A DNA stretch of 64,000 nucleotides, taken from contig JAANOX010000088.1 of assembly GCA_020184695.1 (NCBI GenBank), positions 1 through 64,000 of the forward strand. Reading direction: 5' to 3'. A model generated the notes under the pieces. That model did not search any database. It was not told the DNA's origin and worked only from the letters and a program-made list of their open reading frames with translations. Positions 37,839 to 45,228 of the stretch are shown here, one piece after another (positions within the stretch are counted from its first letter, which is position 1; every line of letters begins with the position of its first letter). Source of the stretch: Histomonas meleagridis 2922-C6/04-290x (taxonomy: Eukaryota > Protista > Parabasalia). The translations under genes were made by a program, and so were the position numbers.

Positions 37839-39383
37839 ATGGAGCGAGAAATGCTAATGTGTACCGAAATCCGAGAAACTCTCCTACCACTGCAGGAATC
37901 ATTGATGAAGTTAGGAGAAGTAGATCCATCATTATCAGAAAATGTGAAAGAATTTTCATTAAAAACAATTGAACTCGTGGAAAAAAACATTTTACCATCA
38001 ATCACACTGCATATGAAATATGAAGCTATAAGAAATTTTATAACAGCTATTTCAAAAATAATTTATCAAATTAAAAAAAAGTATGAAAACGAGCTTGATT
38101 ATACAAAATATGATTTTCTGAAAAAGGAAGATGATGGAAGGTTTACCCTTGTTAAAAAACTTCGGAACTTACATAATGAATCTCTTAACAAAGAAAATGA
38201 TGATATCCTTAACAAAATCACAAAAGACCTATATAAACTTTCAGACAAGTCAGTTTCTTATGTTGGCCTTATTCTGAATTTACGAACGGATCTTCTTCAT
38301 TTATCAAATAATTTTATTGTTTCATATCCAGATGACACATCACTTGAAATTATTAAAGAGTATGAGAAATCTTTTCGGAAAGCCGATTTTATTATTTCAG
38401 CTAATGAGCTAGAAAAAATCGCCAAAAATTATGAAATTGAATTTGAAGGAATCACACTCCCAAAGGAAAAAGACACTCCTCGCTCACCACCTCCATCTCC
38501 AAAGCCATCACCAATAAGTGGCATTCCTCGAGGTATTCCACCAATGGCTCAATTTGGTGGTAACCCTTTATTTGGTGGTCCTAGAACGAGTAATCCTCTT
38601 TCAGCACCAATACAACCATTTAGTCTTCGTCCTACTAATGCAGCACCACAAACACATCAAACACGAGTCGAACCTCCAAAACCGTCGAACGACGATACGG
38701 AACTTAAGAAAATCAAAGAAGAGATGAAATCACAATTTGAACAATATGTGAAAGAAATTAAAAAGATGCAAAATGAAATAAATGAGTTAAAGCAAGAGAA
38801 AGCAAACACAAAAGCACTTTTTGATAGACTTGATCAACAATATCTCGATTTCCAAGTTCAACTTGAAGATCTAAAATTAGTACAACAAAACATTACATTT
38901 GAGCTTGAAGAATTCAGGCAGAACACTGAGGAAAAGATACAAGAAAACACAAACGCAAGTAAGAAAATATTACAACAAATCGAATCATTAAAAAATATTT
39001 CAAATCAAAACGAAGAAAACATTCGAAAAATTGAAAGTAAAGTAAATCAAACACAAAATAATGAAACAACAAATAGTTTAAAGGATAATTATGAAGAAAT
39101 CGAAGAACAAAGAAAAATAGTAAAAGAAAATCAACAAAAAATCGATGATTTGTTCCAAAAAATTAATGATTTGAAAAATGATGATTTCAAATTAAGTGAA
39201 GAACAAAATGAACAAATTATTGAACTTTCAAAAAGAGTAAATGAAATGGGACAACAGTGGTCTGATTTGGCAGGAAAAATAGATAAACAATTCGCAATGC
39301 TCTTTAAAAGAATGAACTCTAAGTTAAGAAAAAAATTTGATCCGACAAACCCAAAAAACTCACCAATATCATCACTTGATTAA
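37839..39383 (+). CDS. Hypothetical protein: helical domain, Pro-rich linker, long coiled coil
   Basis: 514-aa ORF; PRSPPPSPKPSP linker; Glu/Gln/Lys-rich heptads in the C-terminal half. Confidence 0.78.
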   Translation: MEREMLMCTEIRETLLPLQESLMKLGEVDPSLSENVKEFSLKTIELVEKNILPSITLHMKYEAIRNFITAISKIIYQIKKKYENELDYTKYDFLKKEDDGRFTLVKKLRNLHNESLNKENDDILNKITKDLYKLSDKSVSYVGLILNLRTDLLHLSNNFIVSYPDDTSLEIIKEYEKSFRKADFIISANELEKIAKNYEIEFEGITLPKEKDTPRSPPPSPKPSPISGIPRGIPPMAQFGGNPLFGGPRTSNPLSAPIQPFSLRPTNAAPQTHQTRVEPPKPSNDDTELKKIKEEMKSQFEQYVKEIKKMQNEINELKQEKANTKALFDRLDQQYLDFQVQLEDLKLVQQNITFELEEFRQNTEEKIQENTNASKKILQQIESLKNISNQNEENIRKIESKVNQTQNNETTNSLKDNYEEIEEQRKIVKENQQKIDDLFQKINDLKNDDFKLSEEQNEQIIELSKRVNEMGQQWSDLAGKIDKQFAMLFKRMNSKLRKKFDPTNPKNSPISSLD

Positions 39384-39524
39384 TAAATTTAAAATGTTTT
39401 AATTTTATTGTGACAACTAAAAAACATGAAAATATCGCAAAAAACGGTTTTTCAATTGCAATAAATTTTTAATTATTTGTTTTAATTAACTAATTTATAC
39501 ATATTAAAAGTTACGTAAATGTCC

Positions 39525-39597
39525 GCTTTGGTAGCTCAATCGGCAGAGCGCAGGTCTCATAATCCTGAGGTCGTGGGTTCGAGCCCCATCCAAAGCA
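39525..39597 (+). tRNA. trnM-CAT: tRNA-Met (CAT), elongator type
   Basis: 73 nt. Acceptor GCTTTGG/CCAAAGC plus discriminator A; D-arm TAGCTCAATCGGCAGAGC; anticodon arm CAGGT-CTCATAA-TCCTG; T-loop GGTTCGAGCC. The G1-C72 pair and absence of GGG/CCC in the anticodon stem argue against the initiator. Confidence 0.97.
39582..39597 (+). repeat. Target-site duplication, left copy (tRNA 3' end)
   Basis: AGCCCCATCCAAAGCA is identical to 44134-44149. Confidence 0.95.
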
Positions 39598-42500
39598 AAA
39601 TGGATCATTTTTTGTTTTTTTTTCCCTGAAAATGCAGCTACGTGCTCGCAGGACAGAAATAGAAGTCCTCAGCCAGGAGGGTTACGAATTTTAAATCCAC
39701 GAGATCGATTATAATCTGATGATTCAGAAGATCTTTTGACTTTACCTACCCCAGTCGACTCTACTCCTTCTCTCGCACATTCTACACCCTTAGGAGCTTC
39801 GATATCTCCAAAACCCAGCCCCGAAGCTTTGGAAGAAGATATCATCTACGCCGCTGATAAGACCGCTTTTGACCATCTCAAAAATTTTCCAAATGTGTAA
39901 CTATTCAAAGGACTTTTTCTTAGAAAACCGGAAATTCCTTACCCTGATCTTTTGAATTCTGAAGATTCCGATGATTCCTCTGAATTTTCTTTTGAGGAGA
40001 CGGATAGCAGCGAGATTCAGCCACAAAACGATCAACCTATAGAATTTACAGATAATTATCTTAGAAATCCAGAAGACGACGACGATGAAAACCCGATTCA
40101 ATTTAATGTTAACATTCAGACAATCGATGAAGTCAATGAACAAGAAGATATCACAAATAAAGTTATTAACAAGCTCATAACAATCACAGATATCAAAAAA
40201 CTTAGAGAATACATTGATACGCTCGACGAATCAGTTTTTGACAACTATTCAGATTTCGATATAAAGGAACATAATTTGATTCAGCTTATGATTCTGAGGT
40301 ACTGGTTTCCACAACCTTATATTTATTGTTGTAAATATCATAACTGCAATTATGGAACCAACCATCACCAACAAATTGATTCACATTTATTCAATACTCA
40401 TCATAAACAATATCAAAAACACAATTGTTTAACATCAGAAATCATTGGATATTTATTAGTAAAAGATACTGAGTAATACGAATATGATCATACAAATAAT
40501 ACTTATAACAAATTAGAACAAATAAAAATTTGTTTAATGAATAACTGTAATTATGTTACAACCAAAACAGGATCAGCATATGACCACTATAAAAAGCAGC
40601 ATAAAACCTACCTCTAATGGCGGAAAGATGCAGGCCCTTTTTGGGGTCTAATTATGAGTTATGTTGAAGAAAATATTACATTACCTACAATTTATGAGTT
40701 ATTATAACCTAGAGATTGTTGTAAATGTACAATGTGTGGAACAATAGTTAGTTCAGTTCAAGCTATGAGACTTCATAATTCCCAAACTCATATCAATTCA
40801 AAACAAACAGTTAGAGGTTCTAGACCAAATAATATTCAAGAAATTCAAATAATCAATGGTTCACTAAAAGAAATTGAAATCGCAAATAGCCAAAATTATA
40901 AAGATTCAGAAGATAGTTATATTGAAAAACAACAAAGTGAATCTTCATCAGATAATGAGCATATAATTATAAATCAGAAGGATACTAAAGACACAACAGA
41001 AACTAGTCAACAAGAATCAGAAACTCAAGAAGTCGAAGAATTGCATGCATTAAACATCGAAACTCAAAACAGGGAAGAATCTAATTCATCAGTAATTGAA
41101 GAAGAAAAACAACTAAATCATAATTCTAAAAACACAGTTAAAATGTTAAACAATAACCAATATCAATTCTATAATGACAAATGTAACAAATGGAGAAATA
41201 AATATCGAAATCAGAACGTTAGTTTCAAAAGATTAAACAAAGCACAACGAAAAACTATTCAGCCGAAAATCAATGAATTATTTAAAAATTTTATTATCGA
41301 AGAAGCTAAATTTTTATCAGACAAAGACAACATTACATGGAATATTATGGATGGATTTTTAATTAAAACAACACATAGAATTCAAAAGCTATTAACAAAT
41401 ACATTTCCCAATCTCAATCAAATAAATATTAAATTCGATGAGAAACAAATCATAAGAAAAGAAAAACTATACTTATATCAAAATAAAATTATTGAAATCG
41501 ACAAAATTATTGATTACATTAATAAAATTATAGATATTATTAATGCACATCAAGAAGATTTAAACAATAACCAAAACGCATTAAATGCTATTGCTAATAT
41601 TAAAGAAGGTTTAATCAAATCATTAAGTAAATTTAGTGAAGATGATTTAAAAAACATATTTAATATTCGATCAGTTGAAGATATAGACAATTTGATTAAT
41701 GAAGACGAAGAACATCGAGAAGAAAGATTTAAATGGATTAGAACAATACTTAGAAATTATATTGATAAATTAAACCCAAATGATATAAAAGGAAGTGAAA
41801 AACTACGTAAATTTTATGATGAAGACCCTAAAAGATGTATCCGATGGAAACTATTAGCCAATACAACACCTTAATGTAATATAACAATCGAACAACTTGA
41901 AAAACATTTTAATAATGAATGGGCTAATAAAAAACATATTATAGAAGATGATACATGGAATTTACCTAAACTTCTATCTAATGAAGACAACAAATTTATT
42001 ATTGATTATATTACAGATGAAAAGAATATCATTAATACAATTAAAATTAAAGACAATTTATCTGCATGTGGTCCAGATGGAATTCCTAATTCTGTTTGGA
42101 AAAGAAATTAAAAAAATACAGCAATTTTATTATCTCTAATTATTAAAAACATTATTAAATTTCAAAAAATACCAGAACAATGGAAACAATTCAAAACTAT
42201 TTTAATATTCAAAAAAGATGACCCATCAATACCAAAGAATTGGAGACCAATAAGTATTTCAGATACAATTTACAGAATATTTACTACATTATTAGCAGAT
42301 AGTATCCAAATAGTGAACAAATCAAAACATATTTTCTCACCACAACAAAAAGGATTCATTAAAGGTTGTAATGGTTGCACTGAACATACAGTCACAGCCA
42401 ATGAATTAATATCTGATGCTTATAGGAAAAATAGGAATATTATTATTACAACTCTAGACTTTGCTAATGCATTCGGTTCAATTCCACATAAATAAATCTT

Positions 42501-44133
42501 TAATAATATGAAACAATAAGGCTTTAACAATAATATAATCGAAATTATTCATTCTATGTATCAAAATATTTCCACAAACATTGTTATCAATGGAATCAAA
42601 TCAAATAATATTAGAATAAGAAGAGTTGTTAGACAAGGATGTCCTCTATCACCCCTTTTATTTAATCTTTGTCTCGAACCTTTAATTAGAAAGATCAATG
42701 AAGAACGAAAAGGAACAGATATTTATATTCAAGAATTAAATGATAATATTAATATGGGAATCCAAGTATATGATGTAATGTTAATTTCAGACGAACGAGA
42801 AAAAATGGAAGAATAGTACACCTAAACATTTCTTTTATTGTAATTGGAAAGATGGAGGACTTGGAATTCCTTCACTTAAAGAAAGATATCTTTATTTACA
42901 AATTAAAACTTATTTATCTTTATTTTACTCGAAAAATGAAACAGTTAAACACTTTATACAACAAATGGCAGGAGACGAAATTAATTTTAGAAGAATAATT
43001 ATCTCAGAAGTTCCTCAAAGATTTAACAATATCACTGAATATGAAAACCAAATAGCACAAGAATCAGAGAAGAAAACTAATAATTTATTTGTTCGAGAGA
43101 TTGATGCATCACGTAAATTAAATATAGGTCACAACTTCAATAATAACTCTCTTTCCATGAAGAATCTTGATAATGATGAAATTATTGAATGTAACTCGAT
43201 CAATAATTTTAATAGATCGTTAATTACGTTACTTCAAAAACGTCATCTTAATAAACTTCAAGAATTTAAACTTCATGGTCACTCTTTTTTTACTCTTGAA
43301 AACTCTAAATACTCTAACTCTTTTTTCGGTACCTATACAAGAAAAACTTCAGATAGTATTCAACGTTTTTGTATCAATGCAAGATGTAATAACTTACCTA
43401 CCAAGGAAATTTTAAGTAAAAAGAATCCAAATACGTCCAAAACTTGTCCATATTGTAGAAATCAAAAAGAGATTGAATCACTGAAACATATTCTAAATCA
43501 TTGTGTTCCTCAATACTCTAAATATACTCGAAGACACAATGATGTTGGTGAAATTATTATTAAATCTATCGAAAAATCAAATAAATCTAAATTTATTTTC
43601 CATAGATCACAAGAAGTTAAAATTAATGACTTTCATTTACCTGATAGATCTAAAAGACTTAAACCAGACATATGGTATTTGGATGACAAAAAAGGTAATC
43701 TTAATATAATCGAAATAACTATACCTTATGGTGAAATCTCGAACATTAACACATTACCAGACGAAGAGATTTCCAACTCATTAAATTATAGTCGTTACAT
43801 TAAAAATAAGAAATATGAAACTTTGATTCAAGATATTACTGACACATATCAAATTAAAGTTAAATACTATATCATTGTTATTTCATCTCTTGGAGCAATA
43901 CCATTCGAAAATTATTCGGATATCTTAAAATTATGAAATAATAATGAAATCATTACTTCAGAAACATGTAAAAGATGCAGTGAATGTACATTAATTCATT
44001 CTATGAAAATTTTCTGGAATGCTATCAACCCACATCCAAGGAATCGTAATGTGAATGACTCGTTCCTGCGGAAAGAAGAGTTGCTAACGAATAGAAGAAA
44101 ACACAGTAACCTCGAAGGATCATTTAAGTAAAA
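39598..44133 (+). mobile_element. Non-LTR retrotransposon with restriction-like endonuclease (RLE; R2/NeSL/R4 superclade), inactive copy, inserted in the tRNA-Met 3' end
   Basis: Frame 1: three C2H2-like fingers, then RT motifs SACGPDGIP, WKQFKTILIFKK, KNWRPISI, QKGF, LDFANAFGSIPH, RQGCPLSPLLFN and a degraded YADD. After an internal deletion (~42815), frame 2: GGLG, CCHC knuckle CPYC...HILNHC, RHN, KPDIW, IIEITIPY, KYETL, ISSLGAIP. Short 3' A-tract and flanking 15-16 bp TSD. Confidence 0.93.
39608..39623 (+). terminator. Pol III T-tract terminator (T6-G-T9) supplied by the element 5' end
   Basis: T runs begin 11 nt after the tRNA discriminator base, inside the TSD-bounded element. Confidence 0.75.
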
Positions 44134-44149
44134 AGCCCCATCCAAAGCA
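44134..44149 (+). repeat. Target-site duplication, right copy
   Basis: AGCCCCATCCAAAGCA is an exact copy of the tRNA-Met last 16 nt; the first A may belong to the element A-tail. Confidence 0.95.
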
Positions 44150-44159
44150 TTTTTTTTTT
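44150..44159 (+). terminator. Displaced original Pol III terminator (T10) of tRNA-Met
   Basis: T10 directly follows the duplicated tRNA 3' end, as expected for the pre-insertion allele. Confidence 0.8.
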
Positions 44160-44256
44160 CGGAATTTGGAGTTAAATTGAATATTTTTTGCCAAATTTTT
44201 TCATTCAAATCCACAAAAAAAGCCAAATTTATCAGGCGATTCAGAAGTTTCAAAAT

Positions 44257-45228
44257 ATGCCATTTCAAAACGAAATGGATCCTTTCGACGAACCAAATGA
44301 CCCCGCACAAAAAACTTATATTGACGAGTCTGACAATGTGAGAAAGTTATTTTTTTTTGCTAAGCTTGGTCAAACAGATCAATCAATTGTTTATTCTGCA
44401 CTTGATCAAGATGTTAATCCTAACAGAAAAGTAGCTATCAAAATAACTAAAAATACCGGAGGTATTTCTGGCGCTATGTTTGATAATGCATGTGCAGCAT
44501 TATCTTCGTGCGATAGCAAATACGTAGTAAAATTTTATGGTAAAATTTTTTCCAATGATAGAATGTTTGTGGGCATGGTAATGGAATACATGGAAAGCGA
44601 CCTTTATAAATTTATTGAAAACCCGCAAAATATTCTAAATGAAATACAACTTCGCCAAATAATGGGGCAAATTCTTTGTGGCCTCAAATATATTCATTCT
44701 ATTGGTATATTACATCCAGACCTTCACCCGTCAAACATTTTGATAACAATGGATCCACATGGATATCCGCATGTTCGTTTAACAGGCTTTTCTTATGCGG
44801 CCAAATTACCACCACAAGGCCTGATTCAAAGACAATTCGGGAATCCTATATTTTGGTCACCTGAAATTATTTTAAATCAGCCATTTTCTTTTTCTGCCAA
44901 CATTTGGTCTGCTGGACTTGTCATGTACTACATCATTAAAAGGCTCATACCATTTGATCCGTCGCGTACAGATTTAATGTTTACACAAATTCTGAATTTC
45001 AACCAAATGTCATTAGAGGGCATTGGCCTTTCACAGCTACAAAAAAGTTTGATACTAGGTATGATGCGTCGGGAACCATCTGAAAGGTTTACAGTGAATG
45101 ATTGTCTCAATCATGAATGGCTTGCAGGATTTCTCACCAAAGAAAATTCAAATTCACCATTGCTCATGAATACTCTTTATGTTGTATTGGATGGTTGTGA
45201 ATATGATCAAGATATCTGTCAATCTTGA
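44257..45228 (+). CDS. Protein kinase-fold protein (CAMK-like), probable pseudokinase
   Basis: VAIK retained; HRD loop reads HPDLHPSN; DFG replaced by TGF; WSPE, IWSAG and RFTVNDCLNHEW present. Likely ATG at 44257. Confidence 0.85.
   Translation: MPFQNEMDPFDEPNDPAQKTYIDESDNVRKLFFFAKLGQTDQSIVYSALDQDVNPNRKVAIKITKNTGGISGAMFDNACAALSSCDSKYVVKFYGKIFSNDRMFVGMVMEYMESDLYKFIENPQNILNEIQLRQIMGQILCGLKYIHSIGILHPDLHPSNILITMDPHGYPHVRLTGFSYAAKLPPQGLIQRQFGNPIFWSPEIILNQPFSFSANIWSAGLVMYYIIKRLIPFDPSRTDLMFTQILNFNQMSLEGIGLSQLQKSLILGMMRREPSERFTVNDCLNHEWLAGFLTKENSNSPLLMNTLYVVLDGCEYDQDICQS

What the first reader, a model, noticed from the sequence alone, without database searches (positions are those of the whole stretch)
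39525..44159. Site-specific RLE retrotransposon integrated into the 3' end of tRNA-Met, regenerating an intact tRNA
Seen in the sequence: the last 16 nt of tRNA-Met (AGCCCCATCCAAAGCA, 39582-39597) reappear exactly at 44134-44149, followed by T10. Between the copies lies a ZF-RT-CCHC-RLE non-LTR element in the same orientation. Removing the element and one copy restores tRNA + TTTTTTTTTT, a normal Pol III gene. Inference from TPRT: the bottom-strand nick falls inside the T-loop/B-box (GGTTCGA^GCCCC) and the top-strand nick just after the discriminator base, so insertion leaves the tRNA intact, much like a prophage attB in a tRNA. RLE elements are known to target rDNA, SL RNA, U2 snRNA and microsatellites. 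I recall some RLE families reported at tRNA genes (including a trichomonad NeSL-like family) but cannot verify this, so a tRNA-Met target with this cut geometry may be undescribed. It could also be of interest as a safe-harbour insertion enzyme.
Basis: partly seen in the sequence, partly recalled or inferred. Interest (0 to 1): 0.92.

Follow-up and report, generated by a model that had tools for sequence, protein, structure and literature searches.

The report
Retrotransposon that targets tRNA-Met genes
This is a broken copy of a jumping gene that always lands at the very end of one transfer-RNA gene of the poultry parasite Histomonas meleagridis and leaves that gene whole. The kind is already known from a related parasite, but this family and its sister families on other tRNAs appear undescribed.

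Summary
The tRNA-Met(CAT) gene lies at 39525-39597. Its last 16 nt recur at 44134-44149, followed by T10. Between them lies a 4,536-bp ZF-RT-CCHC-RLE non-LTR element in the same orientation.

The genome is the attenuated Histomonas meleagridis assembly. It has seven identical elongator tRNA-Met genes: six carry this element directly after the discriminator base and one is empty. All four complete 3' ends carry a 16-17-bp target duplication, and the flanks are otherwise unrelated. Site-specific insertion that keeps the tRNA intact is therefore well supported.

The window copy is dead. It has nine in-frame TAA codons, one TGA, a lost YADD motif, and deletions of 425 bp and 221 bp. None of the six copies has an open frame.

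Sister families in the same genome occupy tRNA-Lys(TTT), tRNA-Ile(GAT) and tRNA-Cys(GCA) genes with the same geometry. Each starts with a T-run that could terminate Pol III. Relatives in Tritrichomonas foetus and in metagenome contigs end the same way.

The kind is known: Kojima and Jurka 2015 reported NeSL-1_TV of Trichomonas as tRNA-Pro-specific. This is a new member with a new target. Other first-stage notes of this scan flagged another Met copy and a tRNA-Arg family in this genome.

The parts
39525..39597 (+). Intact elongator tRNA-Met(CAT) gene; its last 16 nt (39582-39597) are the upstream copy of the target duplication
   Evidence: ARAGORN. It is 100% identical to six other tRNA-Met genes in the genome.
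39598..44133 (+). Defective 4,536-bp copy of an RLE-type non-LTR retrotransposon; fuller copies are 4.76-5.21 kb
   Evidence: It is 96% identical to the copies on contigs C87, C62 and C245.
39600..39602 (+). ATG at element nt 3-5. It is in frame with the long ORF in the C87, C62 and C245 copies. Here a 1-nt insertion in the T-run puts it out of frame.
   Evidence: Whether this is the true start codon is uncertain, because the first 300 nt show no codon-position bias.
39608..39623 (+). T6-G-T9 run just behind the tRNA: a candidate replacement Pol III terminator carried by the element
   Evidence: Read directly. It is conserved at the start of all six Met copies. Equivalent T-runs open the Lys, Ile and Cys families and the metagenome relatives.
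40327..40791 (+). Three C2H2-like zinc-finger motifs (40327-40404, 40531-40602, 40717-40791): the presumed DNA-recognition region
   Evidence: Regex on the translation. Pfam gives only weak C2H2 hits, and only in relatives. This is the most divergent region between families, at 22-29% identity.
42060..42814 (+). Reverse transcriptase domain, truncated. Motif A-like lies at 42454-42474 and motif B-like at 42631-42654. The YADD region is reduced to Y-D by a 6-bp deletion after 42769. A 425-bp deletion follows 42814.
   Evidence: Pfam RVT_1 scores 2.5e-28 on the C87 copy. The RT matches R2 structures at 3e-35. Deletions come from the copy alignment; motif coordinates.
42854..42865 (+). GGLG motif of the region between RT and nuclease; the reading frame is shifted by +1 after the deletion
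43445..43504 (+). CCHC zinc knuckle (C-x2-C-x12-H-x4-C)
   Evidence: It aligns to the CCHC of R2 proteins 9nl3 and 9dou. Pfam zf-RVT is weak, at 1.9e-4.
43532..43720 (+). Restriction-like endonuclease core: RHN at 43532-43540, KPD at 43661-43669, and E at 43712-14 (coordinate counted by hand from the sequence) within IIEIT
   Evidence: The alignment to the R2 nuclease domain scores E 1.6e-7, and the motifs lie in register.
43934..43936 (+). TGA nonsense codon where the C87 copy has Cys. In fuller copies the ORF runs on, and a 221-bp deletion after 44058 removes its end.
   Evidence: Comparison of the translations, plus the alignment.
44134..44149 (+). Downstream copy of the target duplication: the last 16 nt of tRNA-Met
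44150..44159 (+). T10: the original Pol III terminator of the target tRNA gene
   Evidence: The empty tRNA-Met gene on C83 and the other 3' flanks also carry T-runs within about 10 nt.

Best explanation
An R2/NeSL-type non-LTR retrotransposon encoding zinc fingers, a reverse transcriptase, a CCHC knuckle and a restriction-like endonuclease inserted by target-primed reverse transcription into an elongator tRNA-Met(CAT) gene of Histomonas meleagridis. Shown here: the element sits between a complete tRNA and a 16-17-nt copy of the tRNA's 3' end, and it does so at every copy in the genome. Inferred from that geometry: the enzyme nicks the bottom strand inside the T-loop (tRNA positions 56/57 or 57/58) to prime cDNA synthesis, and it nicks the top strand right after the discriminator base. 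The staggered cuts duplicate the 3' end, so the upstream tRNA stays whole. The element opens with a T-run that most likely ends Pol III transcription of the tRNA, because the original terminator has been displaced 4.5-5.2 kb downstream. Target choice is sequence-specific for one tRNA species and is probably read by the fast-evolving N-terminal fingers. The window copy is an old, dead copy.
For: There are seven identical tRNA-Met genes. Six are followed at +1 by the element and one is empty and followed by a T-run. All four complete 3' ends carry [G]AGCCCCATCCAAAGCA and then an unrelated flank; three of these flanks show a T-run within about 10 nt, and the fourth (C62) resembles the start of another element. 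Every hit of 90% identity or more to the element lies in these six loci. Upstream flanks are unrelated except for the C32/C47 pair, so there were at least five independent insertions. Copy identity ranges from 98.8% down to about 88%, and differences between lineages are enriched at third codon positions. Together these indicate repeated activity over time. RT and RLE are homologous to solved R2 proteins, with the catalytic motifs aligned, and Pfam finds RVT_1. Sister families show the same geometry: at tRNA-Lys(TTT) and tRNA-Ile(GAT) with 14-16-bp duplications, and at tRNA-Cys(GCA) with one of about 17 bp inferred from the extent of a tandem-junction hit. The same geometry appears in T. foetus and metagenome relatives. 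A published precedent exists for a tRNA-specific RLE element in a parabasalid (PMC4640811).
Against: No copy of the Met family has an open frame, so current activity is not shown. The nick positions are inferred from junctions and have not been measured. A-rich 3' ends blur the boundary by 1-2 nt. Terminator function of the T-run is inferred from position and conservation only. Public RNA data gave only tiny low-depth contigs from runs whose RNA nature is a guess. Some single-base frameshifts may be errors of the Nanopore-based assembly.
Confidence: 0.9

Rival explanations
1. The tRNA is part of the mobile unit. On this reading a tRNA-headed element, with the tRNA at its 5' end and a short tRNA-derived repeat at its 3' end, inserts at arbitrary sites.
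For: Homology between copies starts exactly at the tRNA and ends at the 16-mer. The tRNA is 100% identical in all copies.
Against: In three of the four complete Met copies the flank after the 3' repeat begins with a T-run within about 10 nt, as a native tRNA terminator would; the fourth (C62) flank resembles the start of another element. No flank-derived duplication surrounds the tRNA-plus-element unit. The tRNA shows no divergence while the elements differ by up to about 12%, which fits a selected host gene rather than cargo. An identical empty gene exists. Empty and filled copies coexist for the Lys, Ile and Cys tRNAs.
Confidence: 0.04
2. There was a single chance insertion next to a tRNA-Met gene, later spread by segmental duplication.
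For: The C32 and C47 loci share about 150 bp of upstream flank at 80% identity.
Against: The other upstream flanks and all downstream flanks are unrelated. Three further families show the same exact junction at three other tRNAs, and so do relatives in other organisms.
Confidence: 0.02
3. Targeting works mainly by tethering to the Pol III machinery (TFIIIC or TFIIIB on the B-box), as for Ty3 or the Dictyostelium TRE elements, rather than by reading DNA sequence.
For: All families cut at the same structural position, the T-loop/B-box and the discriminator, whatever the tRNA. All targets identified here are Pol III genes.
Against: Each family is confined to a single tRNA species: 6 of 6 Met copies, and all Lys, Ile and Cys 5' ends adjoin their own tRNA. 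That is not expected from tethering alone. RLE relatives such as R2 recognise DNA sequence directly, which is established knowledge. Tethering could still add to sequence reading.
Confidence: 0.08

Closest known systems
NeSL-1_TV of Trichomonas vaginalis (Repbase; Kojima and Jurka 2015, PMC4640811)
   Same: It is an RLE-encoding non-LTR retrotransposon of a parabasalid, reported as specific for a tRNA gene. It is the only retrotransposon class reported in trichomonads (PMC12289875).
   Different: Its target is tRNA-Pro, not tRNA-Met. Its insertion position within the tRNA was illegible in the held supplement. No named T. vaginalis protein appeared in the searches.
Planarian LIN15_SM (tRNA-Arg) and LIN25_SM (tRNA-Glu), R5/LIN lineage of the NeSL clade
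   Same: They are RLE elements with tRNA-gene specificity.
   Different: In the supplement the 3' flanks begin around the anticodon arm (LIN15_SM) or near the tRNA's 5' end (LIN25_SM), so the cut lies far upstream of the T-loop. They are animal elements, and the sequence relation was not tested.
R2 (28S rDNA-specific RLE element; structures 8gh6, 8ibw, 9dou, 9nl3)
   Same: The domain order is the same (N-terminal fingers, RT, CCHC, RLE), the catalytic motifs align, and it targets a multicopy RNA gene by TPRT.
   Different: The target is a tRNA, not 28S. Rfam finds no HDV-like or other ribozyme, and Pfam finds no Myb domain. Here a 14-17-bp duplication restores the target gene, whereas R2 interrupts its target.
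Dictyostelium TRE5/TRE3 and yeast Ty1/Ty3
   Same: They use tRNA genes as safe landing sites in a compact genome.
   Different: They use an APE endonuclease or an integrase. They insert at a distance upstream or downstream of any tRNA gene through Pol III factors, not at a fixed base of one tRNA species. This is established knowledge (see also PMC5391098 and PMC7459421, listed).
Prophages and integrative elements at tRNA 3' ends; Dada DNA transposons
   Same: The insertion keeps a functional tRNA by duplicating or replacing its 3' end, and Dada elements target tRNA and snRNA genes (PMC8869645).
   Different: They use a tyrosine recombinase or a DDE transposase, not reverse transcription primed at a nick.

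Membership tests
RLE-type (R2/NeSL group) non-LTR retrotransposon | Reverse transcriptase domain with non-LTR motifs, including YADD | tested here: met
   Pfam RVT_1 scores 2.5e-28 and R2 structures match at 3e-35 on the C87 copy, which reads YADD. The window copy has lost YADD through a 6-bp deletion.
RLE-type (R2/NeSL group) non-LTR retrotransposon | C-terminal CCHC motif followed by a PD-(D/E)xK restriction-like endonuclease, with no APE domain | tested here: met
   CCHC, RHN and KPD...E align with R2 proteins 9nl3 and 9dou at E 1.6e-7. No Exo_endo_phos hit appears in Pfam.
RLE-type (R2/NeSL group) non-LTR retrotransposon | N-terminal zinc-finger DNA-binding region | tested here: inconclusive
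   Pattern search finds three C2H2-like motifs. Pfam finds nothing in the Met family and only sub-threshold C2H2 hits in relatives.
RLE-type (R2/NeSL group) non-LTR retrotransposon | Site-specific insertion in a multicopy gene, in a fixed orientation, with no LTRs | tested here: met
   All six copies lie at the same base of tRNA-Met in the same orientation, and the ends are an A-rich tail plus a target duplication.
NeSL clade (including NeSL-1_TV) | RT phylogeny grouping with the Repbase NeSL, Utopia and R5 references | not testable with these tools
My tree shows only that the Histomonas, T. foetus and metagenome elements form one clade apart from insect relatives (80/92 support). Kojima and Jurka themselves found the position of NeSL-1_TV unresolved.
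NeSL clade (including NeSL-1_TV) | Ulp1-like protease domain (nematode NeSL only) | tested here: not met
   Pfam finds no protease hit. The domain is also absent from most Utopia elements, so it does not define the wider clade.
R2 | Insertion at the conserved 28S rDNA site | tested here: not met
   All copies lie in tRNA-Met genes.
R2 | 5' self-cleaving HDV-like ribozyme | tested here: not met
   An Rfam scan at E up to 1 of a 5.2-kb copy and of an intact relative finds only the tRNA.

The most novel reading that the evidence does not exclude
These elements may be one parabasalid-wide clade whose enzyme cuts tRNA genes at a fixed structural position: the bottom strand in the T-loop and the top strand after the discriminator. 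On this reading the clade has been retargeted many times to different tRNAs through its fast-evolving zinc fingers. It would keep the host gene working by bringing its own Pol III terminator. It might also use the upstream tRNA as a processing signal, with RNase Z releasing the element RNA from a tRNA-element co-transcript. That would be a tRNA counterpart of the way R2 uses rRNA co-transcription and a ribozyme.
Probability: 0.3. Interest if true: 0.75.

Novelty: new member of a known kind. Interest (0 to 1): 0.5.

Why it matters
The finding adds a clean, well-populated example of a retrotransposon that uses a tRNA gene as a harmless landing site. Six of seven tRNA-Met genes are filled, and roughly a third to two thirds of the Ile, Lys and Cys genes are filled by sister families.

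The genome paper counted only 23-32 retroelement fragments, 0.01% of the genome (PMC8529796). I found at least 35 RT-bearing loci.

Several families share one cut geometry but have different tRNA targets. That makes a natural series for asking how RLE enzymes are retargeted, a question of current interest for R2-based gene insertion.

The intact target gene plus a built-in terminator is a neat host-sparing design, if it is confirmed.

Tried and rejected
**Ciliate genetic code.** The window copy reads open only if TAA is a sense codon. The other copies have ordinary sense codons at those nine sites, and the genome is Histomonas with the standard code. The stops are therefore decay.

**Stops planted in the data or arising from assembly error.** I rejected this because DNA contigs from two public runs match the window across the TAA sites that the listed pieces cover, with no differences listed anywhere.

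**Ribozyme at the 5' end.** Rfam finds none.

**Fetching T. vaginalis NeSL-1_TV to compare junctions.** No named Trichomonas protein came up in three large searches. The relevant panel of the paper's supplement is illegible.

**T. foetus contig L047, the best RT hit.** It holds no tRNA and lacks the 3' end. A second T. foetus contig (L059) did give a tRNA-like 3' junction.

**A full survey of flanks for all RT loci.** I used tRNA-plus-element-start queries instead.

**Expression.** Only small, low-depth contigs were found, in runs whose RNA status is a guess. This gives no verdict.

**The two 514-aa ORFs, one beside this element and one beside a Lys element.** They are unrelated.

**The ATG at element nt 3 as the start codon.** It is in frame in three copies, but the first 300 nt show no codon-position bias. 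I left the question open.
Full report
**Observation.** ARAGORN finds a single tRNA in the window, tRNA-Met(CAT) at 39525-39597 on the + strand. The sequence shows its last 16 nt at 39582-39597 and again at 44134-44149, followed by ten T's. In the whole 43.1-Mb assembly this 16-mer occurs 11 times, and its reversed control occurs 0 times. Seven occurrences are tRNA-Met genes and four are 3' ends of copies of the element. The repeat is therefore not chance.

**Organism.** The assembly has 281 contigs, 43,133,364 bp, a largest contig of 1,157,039 bp and an N50 of 314,021 bp. These figures are exactly those of the attenuated Histomonas meleagridis strain of Palmieri et al. 2021 (PMC8529796). Earlier notes of this scan had suggested the species. 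The genetic code is standard.

**What the element is.**
- Read in frame, the interval 39598-44133 gives three C2H2-like fingers, RT motifs, a GGLG motif, a CCHC knuckle and RHN/KPD/E nuclease motifs.
- The RT of a fuller copy matches Pfam RVT_1 at 2.5e-28 and solved R2 proteins at 3e-35.
- The C-terminal ORF of the window aligns with the CCHC and nuclease core of R2 proteins at 1.6e-7, with the catalytic motifs in register.
- There is no APE domain, no Myb hit and no protease hit, and Rfam finds no ribozyme.
- It is therefore an RLE-type non-LTR retrotransposon.
- The fullest copy (contig C87) is 5,212 bp. It is almost all ORF, about 1,700 codons, counting from the ATG at nt 3 to a stop 83 nt before the 3' end. 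I derived this figure, ignoring frameshifts.

**State of the window copy.** It is dead. It has:
- nine in-frame TAA codons, at 39712, 39898, 40474, 40615, 40705, 41872, 42109, 42493 and 42517, where the other copies have sense codons;
- a TGA at 43934 where C87 has Cys;
- a 1-nt insertion in the 5' T-run;
- a 6-bp deletion after 42769 that turns YADD into Y-D;
- a 425-bp deletion after 42814;
- a 221-bp deletion after 44058.

DNA contigs of two public runs match the window at the TAA sites that the listed pieces cover, and no run listed a differing letter at any of them, so the stops are real. None of the six copies is open. Some of their single-base frameshifts may be errors of the Nanopore-based assembly.

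**Site specificity.**
- A DNA search of the genome finds the family on six contigs.
- In every case ARAGORN finds tRNA-Met immediately upstream in the same orientation, and the element starts at the base after the discriminator.
- The four copies that keep a 3' end all finish with an A-rich tail. This is (ATAA)n-AG in the three young copies and GTAAAA in the window.
- The tail is followed by [G]AGCCCCATCCAAAGCA, a 16-17-bp duplication.
- After the duplication comes an unrelated flank. Three of the four flanks show a T-run within about 10 nt, and the fourth (C62) looks like the start of another element.
- The seventh tRNA-Met gene, on contig C83, is empty and is followed by its own T-run.
- Upstream flanks are unrelated except for C32 and C47, which share about 150 bp. 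There were therefore at least five independent insertions.
- Copies range from 98.8% identical (C87, C62, C245) through 96% (the window) to about 88-92% (C32, C47).
- Differences between the window lineage and the young cluster are enriched at third codon positions, 56 against 36 and 32. The family was therefore active and under selection over a long period.
- The tRNA itself is 100% identical in all seven genes, as expected if the occupied genes remain in use.

**Mechanism.** The junction geometry is shown; the rest is inferred from the established TPRT model for RLE elements.
- The bottom strand is nicked in the T-loop, between tRNA positions 56/57 or 57/58. The 3' junction lies there.
- The top strand is nicked after position 73. 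The 5' junction lies there.
- Cuts staggered by 16-17 bp give the duplication and leave a complete tRNA upstream.
- The element begins with T6-G-T7-9 about 10 nt after the tRNA. I read this as a replacement Pol III terminator.
- The best support for that reading is that a T-run opens every related family, including relatives from GC-rich hosts.
- How the element RNA is made is unknown. The ORF reaches to within 2-50 nt of the 5' end and there is no ribozyme.
- A tRNA-element co-transcript cut by RNase Z is therefore an attractive idea, but it is untested. The public RNA evidence was inconclusive.

**Wider picture.**
- Protein searches of the genome find at least 35 RT loci and a similar number of RLE loci. 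Some sister families have open frames above 1,400 codons.
- Three sister families were resolved:

| Family | Element size | Duplication | Occupied genes | Empty genes |
|---|---|---|---|---|
| tRNA-Lys(TTT) | about 6.7 kb | 14-16 bp | 7 | about 6 |
| tRNA-Ile(GAT) | about 6.3 kb | 14 bp | at least 5 | about 8 |
| tRNA-Cys(GCA) | not resolved | about 17 bp (from a tandem-junction hit) | 5 | 3 |

- The occupied and empty counts come from queries made of each tRNA plus the element start.
- The Ile family also forms tandem arrays.
- No 5' end of any family adjoins a foreign tRNA.
- A further family ends on a 19-20-nt piece of an unidentified gene.
- A T. foetus relative ends with AATAATAAA, then a 15-nt tRNA-like 3' end, then a T-run.
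- A metagenome contig carries tRNA-Ile(GAT), then a T-run, then an intact 2,003-aa ORF, then the 14-nt duplication and a second element.
- Six more metagenome contigs end in the same way.
- In an RT tree the 13 Histomonas, T. foetus and metagenome elements form one clade (80/92 support) with a star-like interior. The Met family is a separate deep branch.
- Between families the finger region is 22-29% identical, against 41-45% for RT and 38-44% for RLE. This fits retargeting through the N-terminal domain, which is an inference.

**Comparison with what is known.**
- Kojima and Jurka 2015 state that NeSL-1_TV of Trichomonas vaginalis is tRNA-Pro gene-specific. They also state that planarian LIN15_SM and LIN25_SM target tRNA-Arg and tRNA-Glu (PMC4640811).
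- In their supplement the planarian flanks start far upstream of the T-loop: around the anticodon arm for LIN15_SM and near the tRNA's 5' end for LIN25_SM. The Trichomonas panel is illegible.
- A 2025 survey lists NeSL as the only retrotransposon class in seven trichomonads (PMC12289875).
- I found no paper that describes tRNA-targeting elements in Histomonas.
- The genome paper reports only 23-32 retroelement fragments.
- Repbase could not be consulted.

**Verdict.** The kind is known, so this is a new member: a new host, a new tRNA target and a well-documented geometry. It belongs to an apparently undescribed radiation of sister families on other tRNAs. Other first-stage notes of this scan flagged another Met copy and a tRNA-Arg(ACG) family with a 57-bp duplication in this genome. 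I did not test the latter.

Noticed in passing
L048 (C153), L049 (C29), L050 (C61); L052 (C191), L053 (C269), L051 (C45); L058 (C19): Sister RLE families sit directly after tRNA-Lys(TTT), tRNA-Ile(GAT) and tRNA-Cys(GCA) genes, with 14-17-bp tRNA-derived duplications. Each starts with a T-run and ends with AATAAACA. About a third to two thirds of the gene copies are occupied.
   Followed up: yes
L054:3014-3036 (C251) and L057:7966-7990 (C57); also L056 (C56): Another family ends with AATAAACA followed by a 19-20-nt piece (…CCAAATTCCAGCAGCGCGG) and a T-run. The target gene was not identified. It may be the tRNA-Arg family flagged by other first-stage notes.
   Followed up: partly
window 39898, 40404, 40705 and other sites listed: The window copy differs from its relatives by many adjacent two-base changes: 18 pairs among 156 differences. 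AG>TA occurs three times, and four of the 18 listed pairs (a fifth such double change at 42109 is not among them) create in-frame TAA codons. That is more than I would expect by chance, and I have no explanation.
   Followed up: partly
L032:6375-6420 (C62, just after the 3' duplication): The flank after the duplication resembles an element start (a T-run, then CTCCTG), but the next 1.4 kb match no other copy. It may be the remnant of an older element at the same tRNA.
   Followed up: partly
L035:2956-3532 (C47): A stretch 70-71% identical to positions 300-900 of the Met element follows the truncated copy. This suggests an older, diverged subfamily at the same tRNA-Met gene.
   Followed up: no
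L063/L064, L060-L062, L065-L069 (metagenome contigs): Dozens of uncultured relatives exist, some with intact ORFs of 1,200-2,600 aa and some in GC-rich hosts. They are often in tandem arrays separated only by a short tRNA-like piece.
   Followed up: partly
window 39518-39621 (run X5, record 24): In a run guessed to be RNA, a 698-nt contig runs from the upstream flank of the C62 locus through the tRNA and stops in the element's T-run. It could be a read-through transcript or DNA carry-over.
   Followed up: no
whole genome (against PMC8529796): The published annotation lists 23-32 retroelement fragments (0.01% of the genome). The genome actually holds at least 35 RT-bearing loci. The resolved families measure 5-7 kb.
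   Followed up: partly
window 44188-45228 (+) and 37839-39383 (+): The neighbours are ordinary genes. One is a protein kinase (Pfam Pkinase 4.8e-41). The other is a 514-aa coiled-coil-like ORF with no Pfam hit.
   Followed up: partly
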